Positions 1,463 to 47,688 are shown, counted from the first letter of the stretch. The stretch is DNA of 64,000 nucleotides from Paraphysomonas bandaiensis (GCA_965644295.1 CBFFRP010000365.1:167793-231792); one strand, 5' to 3'. Notes: generated from the sequence alone by a model not told the origin. A program made the numbers and translations.

Positions 1463-4400
1463 ATGCAAAAAGTTAGAAGTGCAACTATAGAGGATGGTCG
1501 TGAGTTTAATGCCCTCGTTAACTCACTCGGTGGTACAAATCTTTTTCGTGCGCAATTTGGTCAATATAATTTCACGTCATTAATTGAATATGCGCATATT
1601 TCACTTTATCTACCTGCTGACGATGGAACTTGCGGATGTTTTGCAACTTTTACAGATGGTTTGCTAAATGCTGGTGATAATATTTCATTTGATAGTATCT
1701 TGAAGAATCTGAGCGAACTGATGCCTTGTAGAGTAAGTTTTATTAGTTTGAAGTTGACGAGGTGTAACCTCTCTTGCAGGTCACAAACAGTTTGATTCTT
1801 AATTTCTGGGCCATCAATGAAGATGCAGTGGGGTCTAGTGGGGGCTACGATTTACTTCGATATATGTTTAGTCAATGCCCTGAAGTGAACTACGTGTTTT
1901 GGGTGTGTTCTGCCACCACCAACCCTCCGTCGTTTCTAGAGCGCAATTTTACCAAAGTAAATTTGTCTAAACGCACTGTTAAAGAAGAAGAAGATGTACT
2001 AAAAAAATCAGCGGTATATTTCCTTCATCGGTCTAAAGTACTTCCCCAACTTCAAGTAAGAGATGCTCGTGTTGAAGACAACGACGATCTACTACCGATT
2101 TTGCAAAGTAGCAACCCTAATGTTGCCAATGGTCAGGAAGAGTATTTTCTGGCGAATCTCATTCAGTCTCAGGATGATCAGAACAAATTTTTTGTTGGGG
2201 TACATAAAAACCGTCCCGTTGGAATGTTGGCGACTAGTTTGAATATCAACTCTGAACTATTGGCGAGGGTGTTTTCCTTAGAAAAATATACGGGGTTGAT
2301 ATCGTATCCTGATGTTGTTATAAATACCAGACCTCATGTAACACTGCTGGTCGGAGAGCCCCAAGCTGTTCAATACTTGAATTTAAGCAGAATTGCTGAC
2401 GAAAGTATGTGTAATTGGATAGACGGGGCACAAATTCGACAGAGTGATTCGAACCTTCAAGTCTCTTCGAACTTTGCCTCCGCAGTGGCGTCCAAGATAA
2501 AGCTATTAGCCGACAAGAAATCTCAGTCCCGTGGCTGCTTTGTTACTGATTTTCCGCGAAACGAACATGATGCAAGGGCCTTACTCCATTATCTGAGGGA
2601 AGAAAAAATTGTAGTGGATGCTGTAATAGAAGTGCAGGGTGTGGAAGAAGATATTGATCTCGAAGCAGAGGAAGATATTGCTGGAGAATACCTTGATGCT
2701 ATTGAAATTTTACGCGAGCCATTTACCTCTGCTGATGTACCCCATGACGATTTCTTCAACTATAATGTTACTTGGAAAAAGATCAAGCTAGAGGAATCTG
2801 TAGCCTCGCCAGAAATTGCGAATGATTTAGTTCTTGTCGAACTGAAATCTTTACTTGATGGGTATGAGAAAGAAGCAGAAGCATTGGTAAAAAGCAACCA
2901 AGCTGGGCCTTCGACAAATGCATTTGCGATATCACTATTCAGTATGGACGAGAAATTTGAATCAAGGTCTGAGGATTTATTGAGGGTTGCTTTTGAAGAA
3001 TACGAGGGAATAGACTATTGTATTCTCATGGTTCCAAACGCGACAATTCCGTCAAGCGCGTTGACTCATGGAATGCAATGTCCACGCGTTCGCGAGGGAG
3101 TTAGTTTCGACCAATCGCTCTATATCATTCACAGACAAGCGTTACTAGCTCATGATTTTCTTTCTGTAGTAAGACTGGAAGACTCGCATATTGAGTTATT
3201 GGGCGGATTGGTGACAACACTTGATGAAGATGATGGCTCGGATTTATTGGCTACTGCAACAAGATCACTGAGAGATAAAGAAGTTAACCTCGCCAACAAT
3301 CCAGCGGAAGTCTGCTTCTCAGTTGTCATTGGAAATGACGTTGTTGGAGTGGTGTGCTTATCAAGAAAATTGACCACTTCTGAAGATATTACTCATTTCA
3401 GAGAGAATTATCTTCTTGATGATATTATCAGCTACGAACGGCACCGAGGAAGAGCTCAAGCAATGATTACCCATTGGGTTATTAATCCCATTTACTCCAA
3501 GTGGTCTAGATTTATTCTACGTGAAGTCATGAGATACTATCACAAAACACTCCTATATTTTCATGGAGCAAAACAAACTAGGCCGTGCTCTGAAATGCTT
3601 GAAGAAATGATTCCCGTTAGGGTGCGATCTGTGGTATATGCGAAGCCTGCAGATATGTTTGAATCTAAGGACTGCTCTGCGGGTTATTATCCAGCTTGTG
3701 ATCGTCCACTTTATGTCATGATGAAAAAGGATATCGTGCACAGAAAAAACGTTATCGGCAAACGCGTTGTAGTTGTGGGAGGAAATTCAACTGCACTTTC
3801 AATATTAGAACAGATTTGTATGAATGACAGCAGATATGTCAACAATGTATACCTTGTTATGGAGTCACCACCGACTCCTTGGAGATCCTCAACTGCTGAA
3901 AATGAATTCGATGAAAGTAGTGATGTTGCAGATAATTACTCCGGAGCTTTATCCCCGAAAGATATTGATGATTACACAGAACAGGAGTTATTTGCACTTG
4001 GACTGGCAAACCGTATTACTCTTATCCAAGGAAAATTATCTGATATCGATCGCAAAAACCAAGCCATCATTGTTTCTGACGAGGTTATAGTGGAATACGA
4101 TGTCTTGGTGGTAGCGTCAGGGCTGCAAGGTAAGGATTTTTTTTTTCTGTAGTTATGGTTATATTTCGCCTCACAGATGTGACGTACAAGAAGATTCCCA
4201 GTTTGTCATCATTGCATCCAATTTCATGTTCCGACAAAGGTATTTTCTGTTTAGGAAGTTACCATGTTGACATGATGGCGATAAATCACTTGCGAAAGGA
4301 AGGGGAGTATCCCACCAACAAAAGTTGCAGCGATCGTATTGTTGTTTATGGCAAGGGAATAAAAGCATTATGTGCACTTGGACGCCTTGAGGAGCTTGGT

Positions 4401-5877
4401 ATTCCTGCATCAAGAATAGTTTGGGTGAATCCAGAAGAAGGTGTCAGTGAAATTGAAAATGAAGAGGTAAGACTCCATTTAAGCATATTCTACGGTTTTA
4501 GATGTGTTACAGATGAATAAGATTGCCACCACTGGCCTAAAATTCAGTACTGACGATGAAGAAGAATCGCCAGGAACTATAACTATATATTGGAATTCTC
4601 AAATATTAGATGTTGACTATCCTTCTCATGATGAACTCATTGCTGAAGGTGGAACGGGGGTTATTGACGGCCTCAGCATACGCAAGTACCCTCCCAAGAA
4701 TTCAGTGATGGGGCCGAAAGATGAGTTCTTAGAATGCAGTACTCTGATTCTCTGTGCAGACTTGCAGTGCGATGTTGATGTGTTCACGGCTATCAATGAG
4801 TCAGGACTTGTTTATGATGGTGGCGTCGTTGTCGACGAGGTTGAATATGTCACTTGTTATTGTTACCATTTTAATTCTGCTGTTTGTGTACAGAATTTTA
4901 GGACTGTTGACCCTTGCATATATGCGGTTGGTGCATTCAGCCGGTATTCTCGTAGATTCACTGATCAAGTTTCACACAGCAGGTATTATGCCTCTTTGTT
5001 CTAAAACGTTTACTGTTTAAAAAATAAATAAATAGAATTAATTCTCGGGAGCTGGGAGAATACGTCGCTTCAGAAATTATTACAAAGCATTTTACAAGCG
5101 AATCAATATCTGATGATGCGGAATTTCGTCACAATGATACACTGAAGCCTCCATCCTTGACTCGTCCGAAGTTTCACAAATTTCACCGTCCCAAGATAAT
5201 AGATTGTCGATTTCCTGGAAACGTTCAATACTTTTACAGTTCTGTTCCTGACAATGTCCCAAACACGAAGAATGGGTACTTAATCACTGGACCAGCTGTG
5301 GATTTGAGCAGCAGAGTTTGTGGTGTCAAGGTATTTCTCACTATACTACTGTTTTTCTTCCCTCTGTAATAAATGGCTTGCGTAGATTGCACCACTCGGT
5401 TATGTTTCAGAAATTACTTGTTGCCAGTTGTTACATCCTGCTACATCGGCGTATCATCGTAACTTAGCGAAGTATATTGGCTGTCTGGTCGGATGGCACG
5501 AGTCGTACCTTAACTCTGCGGCGTTTGCTTTCGAATCAAACAGTGTACCTGACTGGATAGATTTTTTTTCTGGCGATTGGGTTACATGTCTGAGATTTGA
5601 TAGATTCCCTGCTCTTGCAGAAATGATTCGCGTATCATTATATTCTGATAGAGGAATGATTACTATTATGGATAAAGTCATGGAGAATGCTGAATCAACT
5701 GCGCTTGTGGATGTGATTGCCTCTGCTCGTCGTAATATTTTAGGGGATCGAGCAGCGAATGTGGATGCGAATACCAAAAATGTTGTTGTCGCGCAACTTC
5801 TTGACTTCATAAGAAAAAATAAGGCATATCTGCCGAAGTATTTCTTACCGAATCCTAAGTCATCCAAAAGTTCGTGA
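1463..5877 (+). CDS. CFAP61: Cilia- and flagella-associated protein 61 (multi-exon)
   Basis: Motifs VRDARVEDNDDLLPI, NAFAISLFSMDEKFESRS, RVVVVGG, YDVLVVASGLQ, AINESGLVYDGGVVVD and FRTVDPCIYAVG give the CFAP61 architecture (N-terminal domain plus degenerate FAD/NAD-binding-like C-terminus). ORFs 1463-5877 join through short introns. Confidence 0.92.
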
Positions 5878-6309
5878 ATATAGTAGACGTTGCGATAACG
5901 CCTGTTTTTTCTCAATAATGTGGAGTAAGCATTCGAAAGGAATTAACAGTTGCTTGATAATGAATTATGACTGAATAATGATTACAATAAGTAGATATAA
6001 TACCACTTACTATTTATAATATCCTTGGATATTGTACATTATAGCTAACTGAATGGCCATCATGGCGTTCGATAAATTCTTTTGCCTCAATAGACCCTTC
6101 CCAACTGGGCATTCTCACCTGATAATTCTCTCCATACAGATTGCAGTATTAAAACTTTGCTTTCTTAGTTTCTCTGTTTTCTTAGTTTCATATTTTATCA
6201 TGACGTATGTATGTCAATAATCATAATTGCTACTTGCAGTAATATCTATAATTTCTACAAAAAGTAATGTCTTAATTCTTGCATGCTAAGTACTATTCAT
6301 AATTACTAC

Positions 6310-6695
6310 CAAGGCCTGGTAACCAATAATGGCCCATTAATGGTAGTCCAGTTCCCGGCAATTATAATGACATAAATGAAAAATATCCCGGCAATTATAA
6401 TGGCCATTAATATTGCTCGCTCAGGAAACTATTCTCTAAATCTACAGAGCATTGAGAAGATAGTAAATAAAGTTGCCACAAAGTGTCTGAACATTGTTGT
6501 CTAATATTGCTTAGAGCTTCTTCGGAGTATAGAGGCGATACGATATTATATTATCTAAAAAACACTCAGTTCTATATATAGCAGTACAGGTAATTAATTT
6601 ATACCATTAATGACCCATTAATGGTAGTCCGGTTACCGGCAATTATAATGGCATCAATTAAAAATGCCATTACCATTAATGGTTACCAGGCCCTG
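6310..6695. mobile_element. hAT-type MITE, 386 bp
   Basis: TIR caaggcctggtaaccaataatgg / ccattaatggttaccaggccctg. Perfect 8-bp TSD ATTACTAC at 6302-6309 and 6696-6703. Subterminal repeats ccattaatgg and ccggcaattataatg. Confidence 0.9.
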
Positions 6696-6811
6696 ATTAC
6701 TACTCATTAAGTAACGTACTTTGTTTATGAATTGGTTAGCGGAATCATGCAACCTTTCATTCACTTTACTACACTGTATCCAACATTGTGGTGAATATCT
6801 TATTATGAGCA

Positions 6812-7200
6812 GTCAACGTTACGAAAGATGCTTGTGCGTCACTGCAAGCACCAAGGTGGAACCACTTTTACTCTATCACTTAAAGCAAACGCAGTGAGCA
6901 AACAGAATATCTGACATCTGGTGACTTTTGGATTTTGAATCCTTATGGTGAACAGCCCGCATGCTTGACTTCAGCAGACAGTCCAATATATCCCGGTTGC
7001 CTGTTTATTCGTCAGGGCCCAAAGACACTTATTGGTGTGCCTTGTACCTCACACAAGAATTTGGCTATATAAGTGGACAGAAAACTATTTGGTTACTATA
7101 CATGCGGCTCACGTTATAGTTTCCCGGAGAAATATCTCTGGTACTTATCCCAGAAAACAGTCTGACTTTTTTGCGGGTGTCCCCAACATGGCTCCCCTTT
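6812..7200 (+). repeat. Dispersed repeat copy (family shared with 22960-23365 and 33186-33600)
   Basis: Shared blocks gcttgtgcgtc.c.gcaagcaccaaggtg..accactt, atgcttgacttcagcag, gcctgtttatt.gtcaggg and ggtacttatccc. Confidence 0.8.
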
Positions 7201-33600: not shown

Positions 33601-34070
33601 TTCCCACTTCCCAGAACAGTCTGTAGTTTCGTTATTTATAGCAGTTCGACCATTTTTTTATGATAATGTTCAAATGAAGAGTCAATGGCTGAACATAGCA
33701 AGGTCTTCAGGTAAAACTGCTTGTTTTTAGGTCCACAGATTCGTACTGGATTTCCCCTCAAAATTGCTCTACAAAACTGGCATTTTAATCACTGGCTAAT
33801 TATTCATTCGCAAGTTCATCATACAATAGGAGCATATATCCTTCTCCCGGAATTCAACTAGCCACTATATCGGAACGAGTTTTTAACGCCTATTGCTAAA
33901 TAAAAAGTCTTTCAATAAAAAATCCTTCTCCCGGAAATACTGATCCACTATCTCCAAGGCTTCTGCCGTATAGATCGAATAGTCTCAAAAATAGAACAGA
34001 TACAGGTGTCCCTCCTCTTTTGCCAGTTATCAAGATACTCTTTATATTTACTTTTTCGTACAGTGGTTGA

Positions 34071-34365
34071 TGTTGAGAAACGCTCATTTTACACTAGATC
34101 ACAGAGAGAATTTGTCGTAAGACTAGATAGATTTATTAATATCGTTTACACGAAGTTGTGATAACCAACACTAACTCATTATAATCCCTGCATAATATCC
34201 TACATATGCGAACCTCTCGTTACTGAACATATCATGAAAGATCAAACTATTTCAGTTTCTCAATATCATCACAGCATTTGTACATCACTATATTTCACTG
34301 TATTCTCGTACATTGTCTTGAAAGTGACATACTGAATATACTAGAATAAGATCCATATTCTAATA
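34071..34365 (-). repeat. 3' LTR (295 bp)
   Basis: Matches 40434-40727 except for about 3 differences (gtcttgaaag vs gtcttcaag; gaataag vs gaagaag). Preceded on the minus strand by the purine tract GAGTGGGAG. Confidence 0.97.
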
Positions 34366-34375
34366 CTCCCACTCA
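34366..34375 (-). promoter_or_regulatory. Polypurine tract
   Basis: TGAGTGGGAG abuts the 3' LTR on the minus strand. Confidence 0.8.
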
Positions 34376-34544
34376 ATGTAGAATGCAGTGAGATAAAACA
34401 ACAGTGATCACAATAATCTGATAATGCTATGACTATCTAGTCCCATAGGTAAAAACAGATGTGAAATCTTTTAAAGATACATATATACCTAGCAGTCAAC
34501 TAGATATACAGTTATGTGGGATTTTCACCCACTAAAACACACCT

Positions 34545-37500
34545 TCAACCTCTTCGGGGTCGTTTCTTCTGCTGCTCCTCCACACTGTTAGACACACTCC
34601 TCTTAACCCCGGTAATCGTTTTCTCATGACGACTGAAGATCTTCGTGGACAACGCCTTTGTAAAAATATCAGCCGCCATATCATCCGTAGATACATGAAT
34701 CAACTTTGCTGTAGGAAATTTTCCATTAACATGTTCTCTTATCCAGTGATACTTGATGTCAATATGCTTCGACCTCTTATGATACACTGGATTCTCTGAA
34801 AGATCCTTTGCACTCTTACTATCCATAAAGAATGGAGTCGGCTTCGCTACCAAGAGTCCGAGCTCCTTGAACACCCCCCGAAGCCACACCAGTTCTTGCA
34901 TAGCCGCATACTCCGCCATATACTCAGATTCCATGCTCGAAGTCGCAACTGTGGTCTGAAGCTTGGACTGCCAGGCCAAAGCGCCCGCACATAAAAACAC
35001 GATGTATCCCGTTGTGGACCGCCGAGTCATCCTATCCCCAGCCCAGTCTGAATCACTGAATACATGTAAATCAAACTCACTCCCACTGAATCTGATTCCC
35101 TTATCAACTGTACCACGTAAATATTTCAACAAATGAATAGCTAATCTGCAAGTCGCATATGTTGGAGAAGTACTAAATCGAGCCAATAACCCCACAGCGT
35201 AAGCCAGATCAGGTCTAGTGTGAATCGCCAAATGCAACACCGCTCCAATAATTCCTCTATACGGAAATGATTCGACCCACTGCTTCTGCTCCTCCGTCAG
35301 CTCACGTTGCTCTGCCAACAAATCCTGAACATTGGTAGGTAGTGGAGTCTCCTTATTCTTACTGCTCTTTCCCATAAACGAACTGAATTTCTTGACAATA
35401 TTCTTGGCATATTCCGATTGATCTAACATGTACCAGTCCTCGCCTCTCGTGATTCTGATATTCAGAAACCGTTTGCACACACCCAGATCGTGCATTTCAA
35501 ACGTTTCGCAGAACCTACGTTTAACACTTTCTAAGTAGGTGAGATCAGCAGATGCAATGATAATATCATCAACATATATCAGCAATAAGTGCAATTGACC
35601 ATTACTCCATCGCATATACAAGCATGTATCTAAAATGCAAGCAGTAAAATGTAACGATTTGATAAACTTGTCAATATGCTTGTTCCACTGCCTCGGTGAT
35701 GACCGCAAACCATATAAGGCCTTGATCAATTGAAAACACCACCCCGCTGGCAACTCTTCATCAGGTGGAGGTGCCATATAAACATCCTCTTCAAGATCGG
35801 CATAACAAAACGCTGATGATACATCCAACTGATGTACATGCATATGGAACATAAATGCAATCGCGAGTACCAGTCGAATGGTTATTCCTTGACCACTGGA
35901 GCAAACGTGGACGGCTCCTCCTCCGTTTTTTCTTGTAGATTTCCTAATGCAACCAGCCGCGCCTTATACTTGACTACATTCCCCAGAAGGTCTCTCTTCA
36001 CCGTGTGAACATACTTTGCTCGCACCAACTTCACTCCCCGTGGAGTCCGCACAATCTTTAAGACACGTCTCTTCAGTAGTGAGGTCTTCTCCACCTTCCG
36101 AGCTTCTCGCCACTTCATGTACTGTGGAGATCTCTCCGCTTCAGCATAGGAGTCTGGTATCTTAAAGTCATCATGTTGAAACTCTGCATGTTTAAAGTTA
36201 ACAGTGCATGCATCTGGCACCTCAACCATATTTATTTCTCCTAACACCGATGCGTTCGCCAACCTACGCTGTAGCCGTTTCCGCCGTACACGACCATCAC
36301 CATCTAGTTCAATAGGTCGTCTAGTAGTTATATACGAACCCATACCTTGCTCATCCTGAGCCCGCAAATCTTGCGGTGTGGGAGGAGCCCCGCTCGCATC
36401 CCCAGACCCATGGTCTGTCGAGGTCTGCAACCTCACGACTGTCTGTTGACAGGTTGGGTCAGGACTCTCCTGGAACCCTCCAGGTCTTCCCTGGTCCAGC
36501 TCCCTGGCTGGCGTAGTACTCAGGGCGTCCCCCTTTCTTATGTACCCGGTATTCCCGGGGGTTTCTGCAGTCATACGCACCACGTCTTCGACGTGTATAG
36601 GCACCCGGTGCTCTATATGCTCGCGACCTGCAGTAACAAGTGAACGGTATGCTACAATCACACCCTTACGTTCTACAACTCTTGTTGTCTTATACAGAAG
36701 TCCGTCCTCATCATCAATATGATACGTTCCTTCTAAGCTGGCATAGTCGGATGCAAGCTTGGGTCTAGCGGCCTCCCGCACTCGAAGAGCATCAATCTCT
36801 GCAAAATACTTCTCTGATCGTGATGGCGTTGACTCATCAGTCAATATATGGACTTCTCATCAGAGTAACCCATTAAATATCCAACTAGAGCCTTATCCTC
36901 CCAATCCTTTCGTCGATCCGCCTTCGGTGAAAGAACATAAGTTCGACACCCCCATACCCTAAGATATCTCAAATTTGGAGGCTCGCCCGTTAGAAACTCT
37001 ATAGGAGACATATACCCTTTATCTGTTTTCGTTGGCAATCGAATCAAAATATATCTGGCTGCCATGTATGCATCCAGCCAAAATTGCGGTGGCAGTCCAG
37101 ATTGGATTAGCATTGCAAGAGTCATCTCTCCAGCAGTTCTGAACTTCCTCTCCTCTATGGCATTCATTTCTGGAGAGTCTGTTGAGCTCCACGTATGTTG
37201 ATAGCACTCCTGTGTCCTAAGATACTGACGCAGCTCTTCACTGATTAATTCTCTTGCACCATCTGCATGATAGTGCTCCATCTTGAGCTTGTACCTTTTA
37301 ACATCTCCTCTAAATAGCTCTTTGAAGACTTCTAAGACCGCTTCCCCAGTTCTGTGGACTAAACCCGTCGCCCAGAACATTTTGCTGGCATGATGCGTTA
37401 TCTTTAACACATACCTCTCACCTCCTCTAGCAGGACAATTTAAGTACACTGCGATATCTGCTGAAAAATTCGGTCTAACGGAATTCTCGTCCTTCGTTCG

Positions 37501-38559
37501 GAAGCTGACTCGGGTTATCTTAGACCTGGCACACACATCACACAAACACTGATTTTTGTGTACCTTGGCTGTGAGGTGTTTTCGTTTCAACCCTGTACCC
37601 ATGATGAGCATCCTCTTATGTGCCTCCACTAAAGCATGTTTGTTGAAGTGACCCGCTCTCCGATGCAGCAACTCCAGCTCGTCCTCACCAGTCCTATCGC
37701 TAAGATTTACTTCACAATTACTCGGTGTAGACACATCTGGAAGCTCCAACAGCTGCTGAGTTGGAACTGCTGTCATGCCATTCTTCATGGGTCCCTCCAG
37801 TACTAGCTCACCAGTATTACAATCATATATTTGGATGCCATACCAAACCGTGAATCTATATCCCATTTCGTTCAGCTTACGTCCGGAGCACAGGCATCGA
37901 TTGATCTGATCTGAAATTTCAATGTCTCTCCATGCTCCACGGGAACCCACACTTGTGATATGAATCTCTGATCCCTTCTTAGAGCCGTTTATCACCTTTG
38001 ATGTATTCATATGAGTGTCAAGCATGGTCACATCATTCATCAAGAACATTGATGATGAACAGCAGGTGTCAATATATGTATAATGCATGTCATCATTTAC
38101 ACTACATATATTCGTTTCATGTATATTGCATGACAATTTCATAACATCCTCGATCATATTAGCTTCATCTTCATCAGAGAAATCTGCTGGTTCTCCACGC
38201 CGTATATTCTCTACTGTCAGCAACCGTTTGTCCGGCTTCCTACCATGATTCTTCCCTTTCTCTCCTCTTCTAGAATGCTTTTTCTTCGTCGTTGGACAAT
38301 CAGCAGCAAGATGTTCCAGAGACTTGCAATTTCTGCATCCCGTGTACTCCGCACTTCCAGGACGCTGCCCTGATATCTCTCCATCCTTCTTCCTCTGCTT
38401 CCTCCTGCACTGTTCAGTTGAATGGCTATGAGGAATTCCTTCTTTCCTGCAATATCTACAGTTGCCCTTCTTACGCTTATCCCGTTCCGTTCGAGACCGT
38501 TTGCTCTTTTCAATGAAATTCAGCTCCTCCACCTTCTTGCGTTTCCGCTCTAACGCAAT
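34545..38559 (-). pseudogene. Copia gag C-terminus and pol (Zn knuckles, protease, integrase, RT, RNase H), broken at about 36841 and 35885
   Basis: Knuckle CRNCKSLEHLAADC; protease YIDTCCS; IN HRRAGH..CDVC, SADI, HADGARE, NAIEERK, LRVWGC; RT KYKARLVALG, HQLDV, LYGLRSSPRQW, YVDD; RNase H SDSDWA, SSMESEY, KHIDIKYHWIRE, ADIFTK. Confidence 0.95.
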
Positions 38560-39763
38560 ACTGCAGTACTTCCACTACATGAGTCAGCTTTCTCTGATTT
38601 GCAGCGAATGCGAACCACTGATTGTGTAAAGTGGTCGCGCTGGGGATACAAAAGAGACGATCACTGTGCTGAGCACAATGCTCGTGTTGAATGGACTTAT
38701 ATTGGAGGGGAAAGAGTTGAGCAGAATGCTTTACCAATGCAGCCTAAAGTGTTCCGGAAATGGAAGGAGCGGTATAAATTGAAGGATGATGAGCTACCTG
38801 GGGCCAGTTTTATTTTAGCCAAACGCCGATTAAACGATCCCACCGCTCCATTTGACAGAGAGGGACAAGTATTTTCACTTCGAAATGGTACGCAGAAGCG
38901 TGTGTACTGGAAGTACAGTCGCAATCCAACTGTGATAGATAATGGTACCCCTAGTTCACTGGAATCGAATTTAGAATCTGGCTTGTGGAAACTTGGTAGA
39001 CTGGAGGCCCCATCTGATCAGATTTCCGTCGACTACGCTCCAGAGGACCTTCCACCTGACGATGTAGAGATTACTGCAACAGCAGCGCGACGTGCAGATG
39101 GTGGGTGTGATAGTGACCGCTCAGGTAGATGTCGTCGTAGAAAACATAAGAATTATGTGGAATCGAATTCTAGCGACGAGGATGAATTAAATTCTAGCGA
39201 CGAGGATGAATTAAATTCTAGCGACGAGGAGGAGCAGGAAGTCACAGAGAGCGAGCTGGAAAAATGTGTCAGTGAAAGTTCCGATGAATTCAGCAGTTCT
39301 GATGGTGAGGATGAAATACAGTTCAAAGTAGGTGAGAAAGTGAGAAATATTCATGGGCTCAATGGTATAGTTACTGCAGTGAATGGAAAGTTATATGATG
39401 TTACCTATATTGATGGTCGTACTGATAGACTTAAGTCATTGTATTTAAGACCACAAGTAGTTAGAAACAAAGTAGGTTCGAATAGGACAATGACTGCTGG
39501 CAGCTACACTTATGTTGCTCATGATGATCAATGGGTCGACAGTGGTAGTATAAGGGCAGATAACGTGGTTGCTGGTAAGCGAAAACGTGCTTCTGTTACA
39601 TCCTATAGGACTTAAAATGTTAATAAAATTAATATTTTTTGTTGTCTCTAACCCTAACACTACAAATAGAATAGCTTTTTAAACATTTCTGTTTATATAC
39701 TGTAAATACTCCTAAATTTCCCAAAATATCGTAAAATTCCCACGTTTGCATAATGTTTACTTC
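38560..39763 (+). other. Foreign insert (about 1.2 kb) within gag carrying an antisense, 5'-truncated ORF (reading frame open 38554-39615)
   Basis: It interrupts Gag between ...RYDDTIP(EV) and IALERKRKKVEEL. The ORF has an ESAFS motif, an acidic NSSDEDEL tandem repeat, a Tudor/SH3-like domain and a C-terminal DNVVAGKRKR..V.SY motif, followed by an AT-rich 3' region. Confidence 0.85.
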
Positions 39764-40450
39764 AGGAATGGTATCATCATACCGTTCTATCTTCCTTGAT
39801 AATGTTGCATAATCAACATCATCAGGCATCAAATACAAAGCAACATTCAGAGGAGCATATTCTTCATTCAACAGACCTTCTCGTAACCGTGTTATTTTTG
39901 AGAGCTCCGATATGTCCTGCTGCTGCTCCTGTAGCTCTTTCAGCAGTATTTCAAACCGTATTATATAGTCCTTCGCAGTCTCCTCCGGACGCATACGGAA
40001 AGATCCATACTGAGTCAACAGCTCACTGATCTTGTTTTGCTTCCCTCCAGCAAAGCACTTCTTCAACTCATCAATCATAATATGCGCCTTAAACCTGTTG
40101 CTTCCTTTTCCATCAGCCTTGAACCCTTTATGTAGAAGATGGAATTTCTGAAGCGCCTTCGAAGATGTTTGCACTGCCTCTCTGCAGTACGAATACGCTA
40201 TGGCATTCGCCTTCCAGTACTTCTTCACAGCCTGTCTGTAAGACTTCTCCTCCATTAACGTGAGTGGCTGTTCCCCAAAGTCGCTTTCCTTCGGTGGTGG
40301 CTCCACCGCTACTTCACTTTGCTCTTTCCTCATGAGGAATGTTTCGAAGTCCTCAATCCATTGTTCAACATTGCTCTCATTAAACTGTGGCACTACTCCT
40401 CTATCCTCCTTCTCTCCTCCTCGCTCGCTACCATGTTGAGAAACGCTCAT
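39760..40450 (-). pseudogene. Copia gag N-terminal part; the first ATG lies inside the 5' LTR
   Basis: VPQFNESNVEQW...FRMRPEETAKDYIIRF...LREGLLNEEY is a retrotransposon gag (UBN2-like) pattern. Confidence 0.85.
40416..40433 (-). promoter_or_regulatory. Primer-binding site TGGTAGCGAGCGAGG
   Basis: TGG directly follows the 5' LTR end (...AACA). TGGTAGC is complementary to the GCTACCA 3' end typical of initiator tRNA-Met. Confidence 0.75.
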
Positions 40451-40727
40451 TTTACACTAGATCACAGAGAGAATTTGTCGTAAGACTAGATAGATTTATT
40501 AATATCGTTTACACGAAGTTGTGATAACCAACACTAACTCATTATAATCCCTGCATAATATCCTACATATGCGAACCTCTCGTTACTGAACATATCATGA
40601 AAGATCAAACTATTTCAGTTTCTCAATATCATCACAGCATTTGTACATCACTATATTTCACTGTATTCTCGTACATTGTCTTCAAGTGACATACTGAATA
40701 TACTAGAAGAAGATCCATATTCTAATA
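40434..40727 (-). repeat. 5' LTR (294 bp)
   Basis: Direct repeat of 34071-34365. Confidence 0.97.
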
Positions 40728-41351
40728 GTTGAAGCATTATCAGTGGGTCTAGTTGATCTTTCCTCCAGGAACTGATCGAACTACAGAAGTTTCTTCCAAC
40801 CTGAGCTATCAGAATGTGACATAAAGAACTAAGGAACTACACAATAAACTCACTTCATAATCAATTAATTAAAATTGCAATCAATTAATCGTTTAATGAG
40901 TATACATTTGACAACTCTGGTACCATATATTTTATAAATTATAATGTGGATGATGTATGTGTTCTTATAAAAAAACATAGAGTATATTTTCAATAGAGAT
41001 CACACTGTAAAACTGTATTGTCTCTGTAAATTTCTAATATGATGGCACTACTAAAACTATTTATAGATTAATTTTTATGCGCTTCTTTTCTAAATTCTAC
41101 GTAAAATAACTTCGATGTATTTAGTCTTGCAAAGTTCACGCATCTAATATTAATAATTCGTTCTTTAAGTTAACATATTTCAGTATTCGAGAATTAACTA
41201 TGGCGTTTCAACACATGAATATTAGCCTCGCCCACGGGTGTTACTGATCGTATATCAAAAAACCTCTTACGCCAAAACCACATGTGCAACTATACTCCAT
41301 GTTTCACATTCTGCCAAGCATTAACACTCCAAGATGCTGATTTTAACAGCA

Positions 41352-43361
41352 CTACATTAAGTCGAATGATGTAATAATGTTGTAAGGGTGCTCGCTCGGA
41401 AGAGGAGCGTTTCCAGGGCGCACAGATAGAACAGTGTGAAGCCCCGCTTCCACAGCGGCGTCGGACTCCTCGATAATATCTGTTACGAAGAGAACTTGAT
41501 CTGGAGAGTCCACACCTAGCGACTGTACTATTTGTTTGTAGCTCTCTGCGTCTCTCTTATGCCCAATTTTGGTATCGAAATAGCAACTTAGCATAGGACG
41601 GAGATCACCGAAATTTGAATACTTAAAAAGAAGTTTCTGGGCCTCTCGGGATCCTGATGAGTATATGCAAGTATGAACGCCTGCTCTCTTCATGCGAGAC
41701 AGAAAAAATGGTACGTCGTCGTAAACAGTAGACTTCAATGCGCCAGAAGCATATCCAGTTGCCCATATATGTCCCTGTAACTGCTTAAGCGAGGATATTT
41801 TCCGATCAACCGCAATATTCCACCGTACATATTCACATAAGCACTGCTTCAGCTTCTCAGTGTCATGTGTTGCGGTTCCAGAGGAGTGTGCAATCAATAC
41901 ATCAACACATGGCATACCAGCTGGTAATTTTGTATCTTCCCTATCTGCTGCTGCCTGAATGCATAACGCAGAGATGTCATCCTGAGTTTCTTGTGAATGC
42001 CATGTGCTGCTGAGATGAGCATACACATTATCACGGGCAAACGGAAACAAAACGTCCTTCACGAATGTGATTGGTGTTGTGGTCCCCTCAATATCCAACA
42101 CAACATACTTATAAGAGCTAGCGTTCACTTTCAATTCAGTTGAAAGTCGTTTCTTGCGACAGGCATCACAAGCATGGGTACTAGAGTCAATACTAGTGCG
42201 CTGTCTCTTGCTCGGTTGTTCGCCATTGCCATTCACATCTACTCCGTTAACAACTTCTGTCTTATACTCCGACAAACCAAGACTGTGCTTCTGAATTGCG
42301 ACATTGAAAAGATAGTGAAGACACTCAGAGTGTCGTTTAGCTTGCTCCCATGTGTCTCCCCATACATATATACCGTGATCTCGGACCAAGACTGCGTAGG
42401 ACTTAGGGTAGAGAATAATCGCCTGCTCCAGAGAGTCGGCGAGCTCACTTTCGAAAGCAGTGTTGTCAATGATAGGAACCACCAACTCATCGTGATAACC
42501 ATAGCCAGCAATGCCCTTGATCATCTCCTGGTGAGATATACGAAATTCATTGCTATTGGGGTTAATGGCCGTGACCATGACACAAGTCATGTCGTGACTG
42601 TGGAGTACAGCGCCTGGAGAACAATTATATTAAAGTGTGATCGAACAACTAAGAGTAAAAATACCTGCATTTCTCAGGCGATATGAATGTAAAAACAACG
42701 GTGAGCAGTCAGAGAGCTTAGGCAATTTTCCTGGGGTCTTCTGAGGGGGAATAGATAGTATATTGCCCGCGATGTCCAGCATAAACAGTTCGTCAGGAAG
42801 AATTCTCTCTTTTTGGACACCCGAAGGTGTCATAAATATTCTATTTCCATAACGAATACTAATGCTACCACCAGTTCCAGTAACCCATCCCAAGGAATAA
42901 AACTGTGAGCACAACTCACATATCAATTCACGAAACCTGTGGGGCTTTACAAGAGTCAGAGCATCCACCTCCTCGACAAATCGAAAAGTAAAAGCTTCGT
43001 CATATGACGAATAATTGTCTGTGGTGTTGAAATCTACTGCAACATTAACGCGCTCAATGTTCTCATGAGAAAATCTATGATATAGATTCGCTGGTAGTGA
43101 AAGCACAGAATTAGTTTCCAAACAAATGCGGAGCCAACAATCTGCAGAATCTCTTACGTCCACATACAAATCCCCAGTCATAACTTTATAATATACTGGT
43201 GAATTACTCTTCCTCTCACGAGTTAATACATGACGCTTATTCAAACAATCAGAAGATTTAAAGTCTTTGAATGGTAGCTCAGGATTTATAGATACTTGCA
43301 ATTGCTTTAACATCGCTAGAGACCCAATTTCATTGGGAGAATCCAAGTAAAATAATCTCAT
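41352..43361 (-). CDS. Fused methionine-salvage enzyme: ARD/MtnD-like cupin + methylthioribulose-1-P dehydratase (MtnB/APIP) + enolase-phosphatase E1 (MtnC/ENOPH1); one intron at about 42615-42664
   Basis: Cupin YVDVRD..DCWLRI...LPANLYHRF. Mtn[23 protein letters not shown]|[16 protein letters not shown]. Mtn[43 protein letters not shown]. Probable start MRLFYLD at 43361. Confidence 0.93.
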
Positions 43362-43935
43362 GTTGAAATAACAAGCAATGAAGAATTGCAGATGAGTTGT
43401 ATAGTAGGTTAGTTTATATATATGCACCTGGAAGATATACTTGCAGCAGTGGAGTTGTTTGTGTTGCAGTCTGTGGCTGCAAACACCACAACTCAACCGT
43501 TCACAGAGGGGGGAAACTACCCGTTCATATCTACCCCATCAACCGTACAACGACCGTTTGTTGCCCGTTAACCACCCGTAGTCCATTTTGTCGTACTTGC
43601 ATGTATGCTTCCAATAGCCGGATACGGGCTTGCACTGAAAATTCTATCCACACTGCTGTAGATACCAACCTTGATAATGTATGTGTCAAGTCGTACTCTG
43701 TTGTACATGTATAGTGTATATATGTATATATATGTATGTATGTAGTATCGCTATATGATGTGCGTGTAACACAACATCATTCAAGTAAGTTGTTTAGTTG
43801 CAGTTACAAAAGTAGCAAGCAAAGGATTCACATATAGACTGTGATTGAGTATTTTAGGTTATTCACCTAACCAGTTCTTTGCTTTGTTAATATAAAATTG
43901 ATTTGATCTTTAAGATCTAAGTTTCTTCTCTCTTA

Positions 43936-44544: not shown

Positions 44545-45478
44545 CATAACTATAGCGTTTATATTATTCCCATGTTGGTGCTCCTTGTTTGTTGCTATGG
44601 AACGGTCGTAGCTATTTACTTTAAGCTCCCGATATGTATGCGGTTGAACGTTTTCTATAAAACACACCGAGTGAAATTGCTATGGGTTGCACATGTCGTA
44701 AGTTTGTAATTATAGTAATTAATGTAGTAAACTAAAATACGAATTAGTGATGTTTCATGCTTGACATATAATATAGAAAATGGAACTTTTGAAGGAATCC
44801 TACCAGATCAATAATATAACACAGTCGATTAATCAAAGAGCTCTACTACAATGCATATTATAAAAACATATTAACTAGTTATAAAAACATATTATCTTTT
44901 CGCGCATTCGCTTTATTTGAGTCCCGAATGTAATCGAAGTCTTCAATAATAGAATCCAAGTGAGATAGTAAAAAGAAATATTTGTAAAAGTATATATTAT
45001 TGTGTGTTTGTGGTATTGACGAAAAATGCAGCGGTCATCTATTCGCAACATATTTAATTATTGATGAGAAAACCACTTCAGGTTTATAGAAAATCATATA
45101 GCATGCGAGCCTACAAGTCAATATTCAGTATCACGAACAATAAAGTTCAACTGTACTTGAATTTCACAGAAGTTTATTAAAGCGCAAGAAGATAAGGGCC
45201 TCTAATCACTGAGGCGCCATAGAATTGCGCAGATCACTCATGTTGATTTTTGCTCTACTGAAAAGCCTTTCCACACAAGGAAAGAGCTCATGTTGTAAAT
45301 ATAGCTTGGGTTGCACTAACAATTCACCTAGAAGCTATTCCCCCGTTCTGGGTGTAAGTTGAAAGCTAATCAGATATATTTGTAATAGGTATGATTACTC
45401 TAATCCCGTGAAACGAACTCTGTGTTACGTGGCGATTGTACCTGTGGACACACTGCCCGAACTATGTACTCCTCTTGC

Positions 45479-46136
45479 ATGTATGTATGTATGTATGTAT
45501 GTATGTATGTATGTATGTATGTATGTATGTATGTATGTATGTATGTATGTATGTATGTATGTATGTATGTATGTATGTATGTATGTATGTATGTATGTAT
45601 GTATGTATGTATGTATGTATGTATGTATGTATGTATGTATGTATGTATGTATGTATGTATGTATGTATGTATGTATGTATGTATGTATGTATGTATGTAT
45701 GTATGTATGTATGTATGTATGTATGTATGTATGTATGTATGTATGTATGTATGTATGTATGTATGTATGTATGTATGTATGTATGTATGTATGTATGTAT
45801 GTATGTATGTATGTATGTATGTATGTATGTATGTATGTATGTATGTATGTATGTATGTATGTATGTATGTATGTATGTATGTATGTATGTATGTATGTAT
45901 GTATGTATGTATGTATGTATGTATGTATGTATGTATGTATGTATGTATGTATGTATGTATGTATGTATGTATGTATGTATGTATGTATGTATGTATGTAT
46001 GTATGTAGGTATGTATGTATGTATGTATGTATGTATGTATGTATGTATGTATGTATGTATGTATGTATGTATGTATGTATGTATGTATGTATGTATGTAT
46101 GTATGTATGTATGTATGTATGTATGTATGTATGTAT
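45479..46136. repeat. (ATGT)n microsatellite, about 164 units
   Basis: Near-perfect array with a single variant unit (gtag) near 46007. Confidence 0.99.
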
Positions 46137-46227
46137 AGGTAGATGTTGCATTGGGTATGTATATCGTCCTAATTAATGTTGTGTTATTATTATAATATTC
46201 TAACCATACAGCTACATATTCTCCACT

Positions 46228-47688
46228 ATGGCCGGTGAATGTCAAACTAAGAATACAAAGAATTATGAAGATGAGGAAGACGATAAGCCAGTGACAGCTC
46301 TTGATGAAGGTGAATAACACTGTCTGTATTTCATATCCCTCATGTGCGTACAGGTGATATCGCATTACTTAAGACATATGGCTTGGGACCCTATACGGTT
46401 GCTATCAGGGCTGTTGAGGCAGATATTAAACAACACCAAGAGACTGTAAAGGAGCTCATAGGGATAAAAGAGAGTGACACGGGTTTATCTCTACCCTCTC
46501 AATGGGATTTAGTGTCAGATAAACAGATGATGCAGGAGGAACAGCCACTACAAGTAGCGCGGTGTACAAAAATTGTGAATATTGGGAATGAAGACCCGAA
46601 GTATTTAATTAATATTCGTCAGATTGCGAAATTTGTTGTCGGATTAGGAGAGAAAGTCTCCCCCACCGATATTGAGGAAGGCATGCGTGTGGGTGTTGAT
46701 CGAACAAAGTATGCTATTCAAATCCCATTACCTCCGAAGATTGATCCAACTGTGTCCTTAATGGAAGTTGAGGAAAAACCAGATGTGACCTACGATGACG
46801 TTGGTGGCTGTAAGAAAGCCCTAGAGCAGCTACGCGAAGTTGTAGAGATTCCATTGCTTCACCCCGAGAGATTTGTGACACTTGGTATCGATCCACCGAA
46901 GGGTGTTTTGTTGTATGGCCCTCCTGGTACTGGGAAAACTCTATCCGCTCGTGCCGTGGCAAATCGAACCGATGCTACTTTTATCCGTGTCATTGGTAGT
47001 GAGCTTGTTCAGCGATATGTTGGAGAAGGTGCACGAATGGTTCGCGAGCTATTTTCTCTTGCGCGGTCAAAGAAAAATTGTATAATATTTTTTGATGAAG
47101 TTGACGCTATTGGAGGTGCTCGTAGTGGAGGGGATGACAACAATTCTGACAATGAAGTTCAGCGCACAATGCTTCAGATTGTCACAGAACTTGATGGCTT
47201 TGACTCGAGGGGAAATATCAAGGTGCTAATGGCTACCAATAGACCGGACACTCTTGATCCAGCACTCTTGAGACCTGGCCGTCTTGACCGTAAGGTGGAG
47301 TTCGGTTTACCAGACTTGGAGGGGCGAACACATATCCTTCGCATACATGCTAAAGTGATGAGTGTTGACCGTGACATTCGTTATGAGTTACTTGCCCGAC
47401 TATGCCCCAATACTACTGGTAACTACAAACTTTTCTGTAGTGAAAGGAAATTCGTGTGATATTTTGTTGCAGGTGCTGAGCTGAGGTCTGTGTGTACAGA
47501 GGCTGGCATGTTTGCCATTAGGGCCCGAAGAAAGAGTGTTTCGGAGAAGGACTTCCTTGACTCTATCAATAAGGTATCATCTCTACTGCTACTTGTTAAT
47601 GTTCTGAAATCTTCTCACTATGTATTGTTAGGTTATCAAGGGATATCAAAAGTTTTCATCCACTCCGAAGTACATGGTGTACAATTAA
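46228..47688 (+). CDS. PSMC2: 26S proteasome AAA-ATPase subunit Rpt1 (regulatory subunit 7), 4 exons
   Basis: LDE|[50 protein letters not shown] and the C-terminus [11 protein letters not shown]. Confidence 0.98.

What the first reader, a model, noticed from the sequence alone, without database searches (positions are those of the whole stretch)
38560..39782. Copia retrotransposon with an antisense, chromatin-reader-like cargo ORF inside gag
Seen: a 1.2-kb segment splits Gag between RYDDTIP and IALERKRKK, in an element whose LTRs differ at only about 3 sites. The insert has an uninterrupted opposite-strand frame of about 350 codons, while pol carries two lesions. Its features, in order, are an HESAFSDL motif, a beta-rich block, an acidic tract (NSSDEDEL repeats), a Tudor/SH3-like barrel (FKVGEKV...GIVTAV...YDVTYIDG...L...LRP) and a C-terminal IRADNVVAGKRKR..V.SY. 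Established: ESAFS/ERxFS carries the catalytic Glu in hAT transposases; IDxxNIxxGRRTR..IDY is the CHZ H2A.Z-H2B-binding motif; known antisense ORFs in LTR elements (Grande, RIRE2) lie between pol and the 3' LTR, not in gag. Inference: this is either the 3' end of an unclassified DNA transposase with histone-targeting modules, or captured cargo that the retroelement propagates. There is no clear TIR pair; a 6-bp repeat TACTTC flanks the insert (38567-38572 and 39758-39763).
Basis: partly seen in the sequence, partly recalled or inferred. Interest (0 to 1): 0.8.

Follow-up and report, generated by a model that had tools for sequence, protein, structure and literature searches.

The report
Broken transposon end inside a copia
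The "cargo gene" inside this copia retrotransposon is the cut-off last third of a cut-and-paste DNA transposon (its transposase tail plus one terminal repeat) that landed in one dead copia copy only, so it is an ordinary nested insertion, although the transposase tail it preserves does look like a nucleosome-binding module.

Summary
A 1,203-bp segment (38560-39762) splits gag of a young copia element and carries an open 353-codon frame on the opposite strand.

The "cargo" reading does not hold. The frame is colinear with residues 540-905 of a 905-aa DUF7869 transposase on another contig. The segment ends exactly in that transposon's terminal inverted repeat, which has about 101 copies in the genome. 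It has no left repeat and no target duplication, and 5 bp of gag are lost.

Both junctions are unique in the genome, and 53 other copia copies have the uninterrupted site. This copia copy is dead: its open frame is 324 aa where intact copies have 1,587 aa. So this is a one-ended, 5'-truncated DNA-transposon fragment nested in a copia, and nothing propagates it.

- HESAFS is not conserved, and there is no hAT match.
- TACTTC is not a target duplication.
- No Pfam CHZ match was found.

The tail does fold as a Tudor/SH3-like barrel (pLDDT about 90; PHF1 Tudor Z 8.1). It is followed by a family-conserved motif, N-V-x-x-G-K-R-x-R...Y. The only PDB match for that motif is the 53BP1 UDR nucleosome-binding peptide, at a non-significant E of 0.9.

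The scan has already found this Tudor-tailed transposase and similar broken tails on other DNA of this genome.

The parts
34071..40727 (-). Host Ty1/copia LTR retrotransposon, a dead copy. It is flanked by the 5-bp target duplication GTTGA at 34066-34070 and 40728-40732.
   Evidence: LTR alignment. Pfam RVT_2, Retrotran_gag_2, zf-CCHC and SH3_retrovirus on its ORFs. Sister copies have a 1,587-aa frame, this copy 324 aa.
34071..34365 (-). 3' LTR of the copia element.
   Evidence: Aligned with 40434-40727; 3 differing sites.
40434..40727 (-). 5' LTR of the copia element. A primer-binding-site-like TGGTAGCG follows on the minus strand.
39764..40450 (-). N-terminal part of gag, up to RYDDTIP. On this strand the frame runs on into the insert and stops at 39629.
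   Evidence: ORF list. Weak Retrotran_gag_2 match.
36841..38559 (-). Rest of gag from IALERKRKK, with zinc knuckle, protease and integrase start. The frame breaks at about 36841-36844, and a second break lies at about 35852-35885.
38560..39762 (+). The insert: a 5'-truncated, one-ended fragment of a DUF7869 cut-and-paste DNA transposon. It holds the last 40% of the transposase gene, the 3' UTR and the right terminal repeat. It replaces CCTTC of gag, with no target duplication and no left repeat.
   Evidence: 47 DNA matches in the genome. The C435 copy continues upstream of 38560 into transposase sequence. Empty site seen in other copia copies. Junctions unique.
38554..39615 (+). Open frame of 353 codons plus stop, equal to residues 540-905 of the 905-aa transposase at L033:4471-7188. 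Its first two codons are antisense gag sequence. It has no upstream start codon of its own.
   Evidence: 60% identity, colinear. 63% in six-frame search.
38605..39010 (+). Conserved middle region of the transposase tail: the RMRTTDCVKWSRWG motif followed by a beta-rich domain. No fold could be assigned.
   Evidence: Alignment A5. Model pLDDT about 90 for residues 70-150. Best matches are only Z 5.0 to Spindlin and Foldseek E above 0.03.
39160..39318 (+). Acidic, serine-rich low-complexity linker (NSSDEDEL repeats).
   Evidence: Only low-complexity Pfam hits such as Pox_Ag35.
39319..39459 (+). Five-stranded Tudor/SH3-like beta-barrel.
   Evidence: AlphaFold2 pLDDT about 90. PHF20 Tudor-2 TM 0.79-0.80 at E 2e-3. 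PHF1 Tudor Z 8.1, rmsd 1.4 over 50 residues, tied within 1 Z with Agenet, PWWP, KOW and NdhS barrels.
39532..39606 (+). Conserved C-terminal motif W-V-D ... N-V-x-x-G-K-R-x-R ... Y. It is predicted disordered.
   Evidence: Conserved columns in alignment A4. Single PDB hit is the 53BP1 UDR peptide 5kgf_L at E 0.9. No Pfam CHZ match.
39737..39762 (-). Right terminal inverted repeat of the DNA transposon (AAGTAAACATTATGCAAACGTGGGAA, read inward). It is the only copy in the window.
   Evidence: One match in the window against 0 expected. In the genome, 49 forward and 52 reverse matches against 0 for the control.

Best explanation
A cut-and-paste DNA transposon of the DUF7869 family left a one-ended fragment in the gag gene of one already integrated copia copy. 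The family carries a transposase plus a divergent Myb-like helper gene, has roughly 26-bp terminal repeats beginning AAGTAAAC, and makes 3-bp target duplications. The fragment runs from inside the transposase gene to the exact right terminus.

Two routes fit the junctions. In the first, a complete element inserted at CAG and its left 4-5 kb was later deleted together with about 8 bp of flank. In the second, only the right end was joined, by one-ended strand transfer or by end-joining capture of a broken excised copy, with loss of 5 bp of target.

The open 353-codon frame is inherited from a recently active transposase gene. It has no promoter or start codon of its own and is not a gene of the copia element.

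What is shown:
- the homology to the transposase;
- the terminal repeat at the end of the segment;
- the empty sites in other copia copies;
- the uniqueness of both junctions.

What is inferred:
- which of the two routes made the fragment;
- that the fragment does nothing now.
For: - **Parent protein.** The frame is colinear with residues 540-905 of a 905-aa ORF on contig C373, at 60% identity. That ORF matches Pfam DUF7869 at 81.9 bits against a cut-off of 26. A divergent ORF with a weak, below-cutoff Myb-like match sits next to it.
- **Terminal repeat.** The segment ends at 39762 in a 26-nt repeat that occurs 49 times forward and 52 times in reverse in the genome, against 0 for the control. 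Pairs lie 4.4-6.6 kb apart on other contigs.
- **Family target duplication.** A 594-bp miniature copy at L033:7909-8502 has both repeats and a 3-bp duplication, CGG.
- **Truncation.** The 95%-identical copy on C435 continues upstream of the window's 5' end into transposase sequence, so 38560 is a truncation point.
- **Target site.** The uninterrupted site reads GCAAT-CCTTC-CAGG in 9 of the 9 sister-copia loci where the site could be read and in 53 places genome-wide.
- **Uniqueness.** Both junction sequences occur once.
- **Age and state.** The copia copy has two private frame breaks and LTRs about 99% identical. The nearest transposon fragment is 99.3% identical over 446 nt. The open frame therefore needs no selection to explain it.
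Against: - No full-length master copy of this exact subfamily was seen. That subfamily has the ATTATG variant of the terminal repeat, with copies at least 95% identical. The best full-length relative is only 60% identical in protein.
- The route that produced a one-ended fragment cannot be decided from one locus.
- There are no read or RNA data, so a misassembly, or transcription of the frame, cannot be excluded here.
Confidence: 0.9

Rival explanations
1. Captured cargo. The copia element acquired the antisense frame and carries it along when it retrotransposes, as in LTR elements with antisense ORFs.
For: The frame is intact and lies inside a young element whose LTRs are about 99% identical.
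Against: - Both junctions are unique in the genome.
- 53 copia copies have the empty site.
- The insert breaks gag, and this copy also has two private pol lesions.
- The segment ends in the terminal repeat of a DNA transposon.
Confidence: 0.02
2. Assembly artefact. Two repeat families were joined wrongly by the assembler.
For: Both partners are high-copy repeats. The copia family has at least 40 copies at 99-100% identity, and the transposon end has about 100 copies.
Against: - Gag resumes precisely on the other side of the insert, with only 5 bp missing.
- Both flanks belong to one element with matching LTRs and a matching GTTGA target duplication. A chimeric join would not restore the same element in register.
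Confidence: 0.03
3. A functional truncated protein. The fragment is expressed, for example from a copia antisense or internal promoter. A product made of the tail only would compete with full-length transposase for chromatin sites, acting as a repressor or as a domesticated reader.
For: - There is an uninterrupted 353-codon frame with in-frame Met codons near its start.
- The tail domains are conserved in the family.
- Truncated transposase products act as repressors in other systems, for example P element KP. This is from general knowledge and was not tested here.
Against: - There is no evidence of a promoter or of transcription.
- Youth alone explains the open frame, given the 99.3% identity to another fragment.
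- Comparable fragments elsewhere carry stops and frameshifts.
Confidence: 0.05

Closest known systems
DUF7869 (Pfam PF25273) transposons, called Sola1-like or Zator/ISAzo13-like in other notes of this scan
   Same: - The parent protein matches DUF7869 well above the cut-off.
- It carries the DGMAQGH, DGGSEN and GHTHEDID motif series.
- The family has terminal inverted repeats and short target duplications.
   Different: - The window holds only the tail of the gene and one terminal repeat. It has no catalytic core, no left end and no target duplication.
- I did not test the Sola1 or Zator assignment.
- No paper in the library mentions DUF7869.
Fractured or one-ended copies of cut-and-paste transposons, such as fractured Ac in maize and terminal-deletion P elements (from general knowledge)
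   Same: One intact terminus is joined to host DNA and the other side is truncated inside the element. There is no target duplication, and a few bases of the target are lost.
   Different: The events that make such copies are known from genetics in those systems. Here the route is inferred from a single pair of junctions.
   Same: An opposite-strand open frame lies inside an LTR element.
   Different: In those families the ORF is shared by the copies and lies between pol and the 3' LTR. Here it interrupts gag and is present in 1 of 54 sites.
53BP1 tandem Tudor plus UDR motif, the nucleosome-binding module (PDB 5KGF; review PMC9162042)
   Same: - A Tudor-fold barrel is followed by a short motif.
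- SIRADNVVAGKRKRAS aligns with DISLDNLVEGKRKRRS.
- Four of the five UDR residues needed for recruitment are kept: I, N, L (here V) and R.
- N, V, G, K, R and R are the family-conserved columns.
   Different: - The match has E 0.9, so it is not significant.
- There is one barrel, not a tandem pair, with a linker of about 35 residues.
- L1619 is Ala here.
- No full aromatic cage is present.
- GKRKR could be a plain nuclear localisation signal.
CHZ motif of Chz1/HIRIP3, an H2A(.Z)-H2B chaperone motif (PMC6544321, PMC10854748)
   Same: An acidic tract lies upstream of a short N-[IV]-x-x-G-[KR]-R-x-R...Y-like stretch.
   Different: There is no PF09649 match at E up to 10, and Chz1 chains are not among the PDB hits at E up to 10. 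The motif here sits at the extreme C-terminus, after a folded barrel.
Chromodomain integrases of chromoviruses, and other chromatin-tethered integrases (from general knowledge)
   Same: A small reader-type barrel is appended to the C-terminus of a mobile-element recombinase, which suggests tethering to chromatin.
   Different: The enzyme class differs (DUF7869 transposase), and so does the barrel type. No binding or targeting data exist.

Membership tests
Ty1/copia LTR retrotransposon (the host element) | Paired LTRs with a target duplication, copia-type gag, and pol in the order integrase before RVT_2 reverse transcriptase. | tested here: met
   LTRs of 294-295 nt with 3 differences and a GTTGA duplication. 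RVT_2 at E 5.8e-37, plus zf-CCHC, SH3_retrovirus and a weak Retrotran_gag_2 match.
DUF7869 cut-and-paste DNA transposon | The protein carries the DUF7869 catalytic core. | tested here: not met
   The window frame has no DUF7869 match, because it starts at residue 540, after the core at residues 211-369. The full-length relative at L033:4471-7188 meets the criterion, at 81.9 bits against a cut-off of 26. The window copy is therefore a fragment of a member, not a working member.
DUF7869 cut-and-paste DNA transposon | Terminal inverted repeats at both ends. | tested here: not met
   Only the right repeat, at 39737-39762, is in the window. Across the genome there are 49 forward and 52 reverse copies.
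DUF7869 cut-and-paste DNA transposon | A short (3-bp) target-site duplication. | tested here: not met
   At the window site 5 bp (CCTTC) are lost and nothing is duplicated. The miniature copy at L033:7909-8502 has a CGG duplication.
Sola1 superfamily | A DDD transposase related to Sola1, with a 4-bp target duplication. | not tested
   The name comes from other notes of this scan. I ran no comparison with Sola1 sequences.
hAT transposase | A C-terminal hAT dimerisation domain with the conserved catalytic Glu motif, and 8-bp target duplications. | tested here: not met
   No hAT family appears at E up to 1. HESAFS is replaced by SIIRNL or GIGADL in relatives P0002 and P0001. There is no 8-bp duplication.
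LTR retrotransposon carrying an antisense cargo ORF | The ORF is shared by other copies of the element family. | tested here: not met
   Junctions are unique. There are 53 empty sites. No other full-length match to the insert exists.
Tudor / royal-family reader domain | A five-stranded SH3-like barrel of Tudor type. | tested here: met
   pLDDT about 90. PHF1 Tudor Z 8.1 with rmsd 1.4 over 50 residues, and PHF20 Tudor-2 TM 0.8. KOW and NdhS barrels tie within 1 Z, so the subtype is open.
Tudor / royal-family reader domain | An aromatic cage for a methylated Lys or Arg. | tested here: inconclusive
   The conserved aromatics are F/Y12, Y36 and Y40 only. An invariant R-N and aliphatic residues sit where cage Trp and Tyr lie in my hand alignment with 53BP1 and PHF1. 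No Pfam Tudor match at E up to 10. No residue-level structural superposition was available.
CHZ motif (Chz1/HIRIP3) | A match to Pfam PF09649 or to Chz1 sequence, and H2A(.Z)-H2B binding. | tested here: not met
   No PF09649 match at E up to 10. No Chz1 chain among PDB hits at E up to 10. Binding cannot be tested with these tools.
53BP1-type UDR motif | Sequence match to the UDR, with the residues needed for nucleosome binding. | tested here: inconclusive
   Single PDB hit 5kgf_L at E 0.9, with 10 of 15 positions identical. I1617, N1621, L1622 (here V) and R1627 are kept, and L1619 is Ala. The family profile A4 did not retrieve it at E up to 10.

The most novel reading that the evidence does not exclude
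The fragment preserves an intact copy of a nucleosome-tethering tail of a DUF7869 transposase. That tail is a Tudor-fold barrel followed by a UDR/CHZ-like basic motif. It would work like the Tudor-UDR module of 53BP1, holding the enzyme on the histone surface of nucleosomes and so steering where the transposon integrates. It would be the DNA-transposon counterpart of chromodomain integrases.
Probability: 0.25. Interest if true: 0.6.

Novelty: new member of a known kind. Interest (0 to 1): 0.22.

Why it matters
As a copia element with cargo, it does not matter. It is one more nested, truncated transposon fragment in a repeat-rich protist genome, and no new class of retroelement cargo should be counted here.

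Two smaller points are of use:
- **For annotators.** Long open antisense frames inside young LTR elements in this genome can be tails of DUF7869 transposases. These can be recognised by the terminal repeat that begins AAGTAAAC.
- **For transposon biology.** The tail is conserved in only 31 representative proteins out of 1.84 billion. It joins a Tudor-fold barrel to a motif that resembles known nucleosome-surface binders. If it tethers the transposase to chromatin, it would be a rare case of reader-guided targeting in a cut-and-paste DNA transposon. This claim belongs to the intact elements elsewhere in the genome, which the scan has already flagged.

Tried and rejected
**LINE-like origin.** Many copies share the 3' end with variable 5' ends, so I first suspected LINE-like 5' truncation. 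I dropped this once the shared end proved to be a terminal inverted repeat with paired copies and a miniature derivative with a 3-bp duplication. Many of the "5' ends" also lie in an internal minisatellite.

**TACTTC as a target duplication.** Rejected.

**hAT origin.** Rejected.

**Searches on the tail that gave little**
- Pfam gave only weak YjdM, DUF7141 and SH3_1 rows.
- The ESM Atlas gave nothing above 0.79.
- The word-based protein search found only two relatives, probably swamped by acidic low-complexity words.

**Middle domain.** Foldseek rows were all at E above 0.03, and the best structural match was Z 5.0 to Spindlin. I assign no fold.

**Literature.** A search for DUF7869 found no paper.

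- As a result I could not fetch the paired-repeat full-length copies or the contigs of P0001 and P0002.
- I did not score the family motif profile against the human 53BP1 peptide in a script, because that would have meant typing a human sequence.

Full report
**What is there**

The window holds a Ty1/copia element on the minus strand, at 34071-40727.
- Its LTRs are 294-295 nt long and differ at three sites. The element is flanked by a 5-bp GTTGA duplication.
- Its ORFs match RVT_2, a zinc knuckle, the retroviral SH3-like integrase domain and, weakly, copia-type gag.
- Gag reads up to RYDDTIP at 39765 and resumes with IALERKRKK at 38559.
- The 1,203 bp between them (38560-39762) carry a plus-strand frame that is open from 38554 to the stop at 39613-39615, which is 353 codons.
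- Pol is broken twice. Sister copies at 97-99% identity have a single 1,587-aa frame where this copy has 324 aa.

**The insert is a repeat, and it is the tail of a DNA transposon**

The segment has 47 DNA matches elsewhere in the genome. A six-frame search with its translation found a 905-aa open frame on contig C373, at L033:4471-7188.
- The window frame is colinear with residues 540-905 of that protein, at 60% identity.
- The protein matches Pfam DUF7869 at 81.9 bits against a cut-off of 26, over residues 211-369.
- It carries the motif series DGMAQGH, DGGSEN and GHTHEDID.
- A divergent 703-aa ORF with a weak Myb-like match lies next to it.

Notes from other windows of this scan named AAGTAAAC as the terminal repeat of such elements, so I tested that.
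- The insert ends at 39762 in the 26-nt sequence AAGTAAACATTATGCAAACGTGGGAA, read inward. This is the only copy in the window, with 0 expected by chance.
- The genome holds 49 forward and 52 reverse copies, against 0 for the control. Facing pairs lie 4.4-6.6 kb apart on several contigs.
- A 594-bp miniature derivative at L033:7909-8502 has both repeats and a 3-bp CGG duplication.
- The 95%-identical copy on contig C435 continues upstream of the window's 5' end into transposase sequence.

So 38560 is a truncation point, not an element end.

**It is private to this copia copy**

- The uninterrupted gag site reads GCAAT-CCTTC-CAGG in all nine sister copies where I could read it, and in 53 places genome-wide.
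- Each of the two junction sequences occurs once, in the window.
- At the filled site CCTTC is missing and nothing is duplicated.
- The TACTTC pair is not a target duplication. Its first copy lies inside transposon sequence that the C435 copy shares.
- On the copia strand, gag runs into the insert and stops after about 45 codons.

Nothing suggests that the retroelement propagates the segment.

**How it arose (inferred)**

Two routes fit the junctions.
- A complete element inserted with a CAG duplication, and its left 4-5 kb was then lost together with about 8 bp of flank.
- Only the right end was joined, by one-ended strand transfer or by end-joining capture of a broken excised copy, with 5 bp of target lost.

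Another copia-family copy on contig C149 has 1.25 kb of pol replaced by a 610-bp right-end fragment of the same transposon. Such one-ended remnants therefore recur in this genome. One locus cannot decide between the routes.

The open frame needs no selection to explain it. The copia LTRs are about 99% identical, and another fragment of the transposon is 99.3% identical over 446 nt. Comparable fragments elsewhere carry stops.

**The protein features**

*HESAFS.*
- It lies about 170 residues after the catalytic core.
- Relatives have SIIRNL or GIGADL at that position.
- No hAT family matches.

*Middle region.* The RMRTTDCVKWSRWG motif plus a beta-rich domain is conserved, and residues 70-150 are modelled confidently. 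Its best structural matches are at noise level: Z 5.0 to Spindlin, and Foldseek E above 0.03.

*Barrel.* The last 108 residues were modelled with a 20-sequence alignment.
- Residues 11-57 form a five-stranded barrel at pLDDT about 90, and the rest is disordered.
- Foldseek ranks PHF20 Tudor-2 first, with TM 0.79-0.80 on the target and E 2e-3.
- The second-look aligner gives PHF1 Tudor Z 8.1 with rmsd 1.4 over 50 residues. PHF19, PHF20, Agenet, PWWP, KOW and NdhS barrels fall within one Z unit.
- "Tudor/SH3-like barrel" is thus fair as a fold.
- The conserved residues are F/Y12, R19-N20, G26, Y36-D37, Y40 and D42-G43. In my hand alignment these do not form a full aromatic cage.

*C-terminal motif.*
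- It is conserved as W-V-D ... N-V-x-x-G-K-R-x-R ... Y.
- Pfam CHZ is not matched at E up to 10, and Chz1 is not among the PDB sequence hits.
- The only PDB hit of the last 38 residues is the 21-residue UDR peptide of 53BP1 from its nucleosome complex (5kgf_L), at E 0.9 and with 10 of 15 positions identical.
- A review lists I1617, L1619, N1621, L1622 and R1627 as needed for recruitment, and says the UDR binds the nucleosome acidic patch (PMC9162042). Here these positions read I, A, N, V and R.
- 53BP1 also has Tudor domains directly before the UDR, so the parallel is suggestive.
- It is not significant, the family profile did not retrieve the peptide, and GKRKR may simply be a nuclear localisation signal.

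**Breadth of the family**

A full scan of 1.84 billion representative proteins found only 31 relatives of the 353-aa frame, 12 of them at E up to 1e-10. The word-based search found two, both carrying DUF7869. No paper in the library mentions DUF7869.

**Relation to earlier notes of this scan**

Other windows of the same genome have already yielded this Tudor-tailed DUF7869 transposase. At least two further "cargo genes" there turned out to be broken transposase tails. The family's terminal repeat and 3-bp duplications were also noted before. I used the repeat as a lead and confirmed it here. I did not test the Sola1, Zator or diatom statements.

**Limits**

I therefore did not see a near-identical full-length master copy, or the contigs of the metagenomic relatives.
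- No read or expression data were available.

**Verdict**

The feature is real, but it is an ordinary nested fragment and not retroelement cargo. The only part of wider interest is the possible nucleosome-binding tail. That belongs to the intact transposons elsewhere and has already been noted by the scan.

Noticed in passing
L041 (G000:C149:203501-213500), about 3463-6970: A copy of a related copia family, 87-93% identical, has about 1.25 kb of pol (window equivalents 35822-37070) replaced by a 610-bp right-end fragment of the same DNA transposon. This is another one-ended remnant, here in the sense orientation.
   Followed up: partly
L034 (G000:C132:30001-40000), 4765-5403, 6887-6975 and 6988-7191: Three right ends of the transposon lie in the same orientation within 2.4 kb. 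All are followed by the same flank (AACTTA), so they look like local duplications of one junction rather than separate insertions.
   Followed up: partly
L039-L044, e.g. L043:4650-4930: Many copies at about 81% identity break off inside an internal minisatellite, with units of about 55-165 nt containing GGTGCACCGAGAGATAGTG. No left terminal repeat lies within 4.6 kb upstream. It is unclear whether these are internal-deletion derivatives or one-ended remnants.
   Followed up: partly
window 38605-39010, and alignment A5: The transposase region just after the catalytic part has a near-invariant RMRTTDCVKWSRWG motif followed by a confidently modelled beta-rich domain. It has no convincing match in the PDB: best Z 5.0, Foldseek E above 0.03.
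   Followed up: partly
window 45332-46400: A long perfect 8-nt microsatellite array, at least 85 overlapping 300-nt copies at a spacing of 8. It creates spurious ORFs such as TYIHTYIH and CMYVCMYV in all frames.
   Followed up: no
window 41352-43496, minus strand: Two adjacent ORFs lie here. The downstream one matches class II aldolase and HAD hydrolase, the domain content expected of a methionine-salvage fusion gene. Another note of this scan calls the locus an MtnD-MtnB-MtnC triple fusion.
   Followed up: no
genome-wide: The host copia family looks recently active. At least ten copies at 97-99% identity have an uninterrupted 1,587-aa gag-pol frame. A second family at 86% identity has dozens of copies with 1,475-1,577-aa frames.
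   Followed up: no
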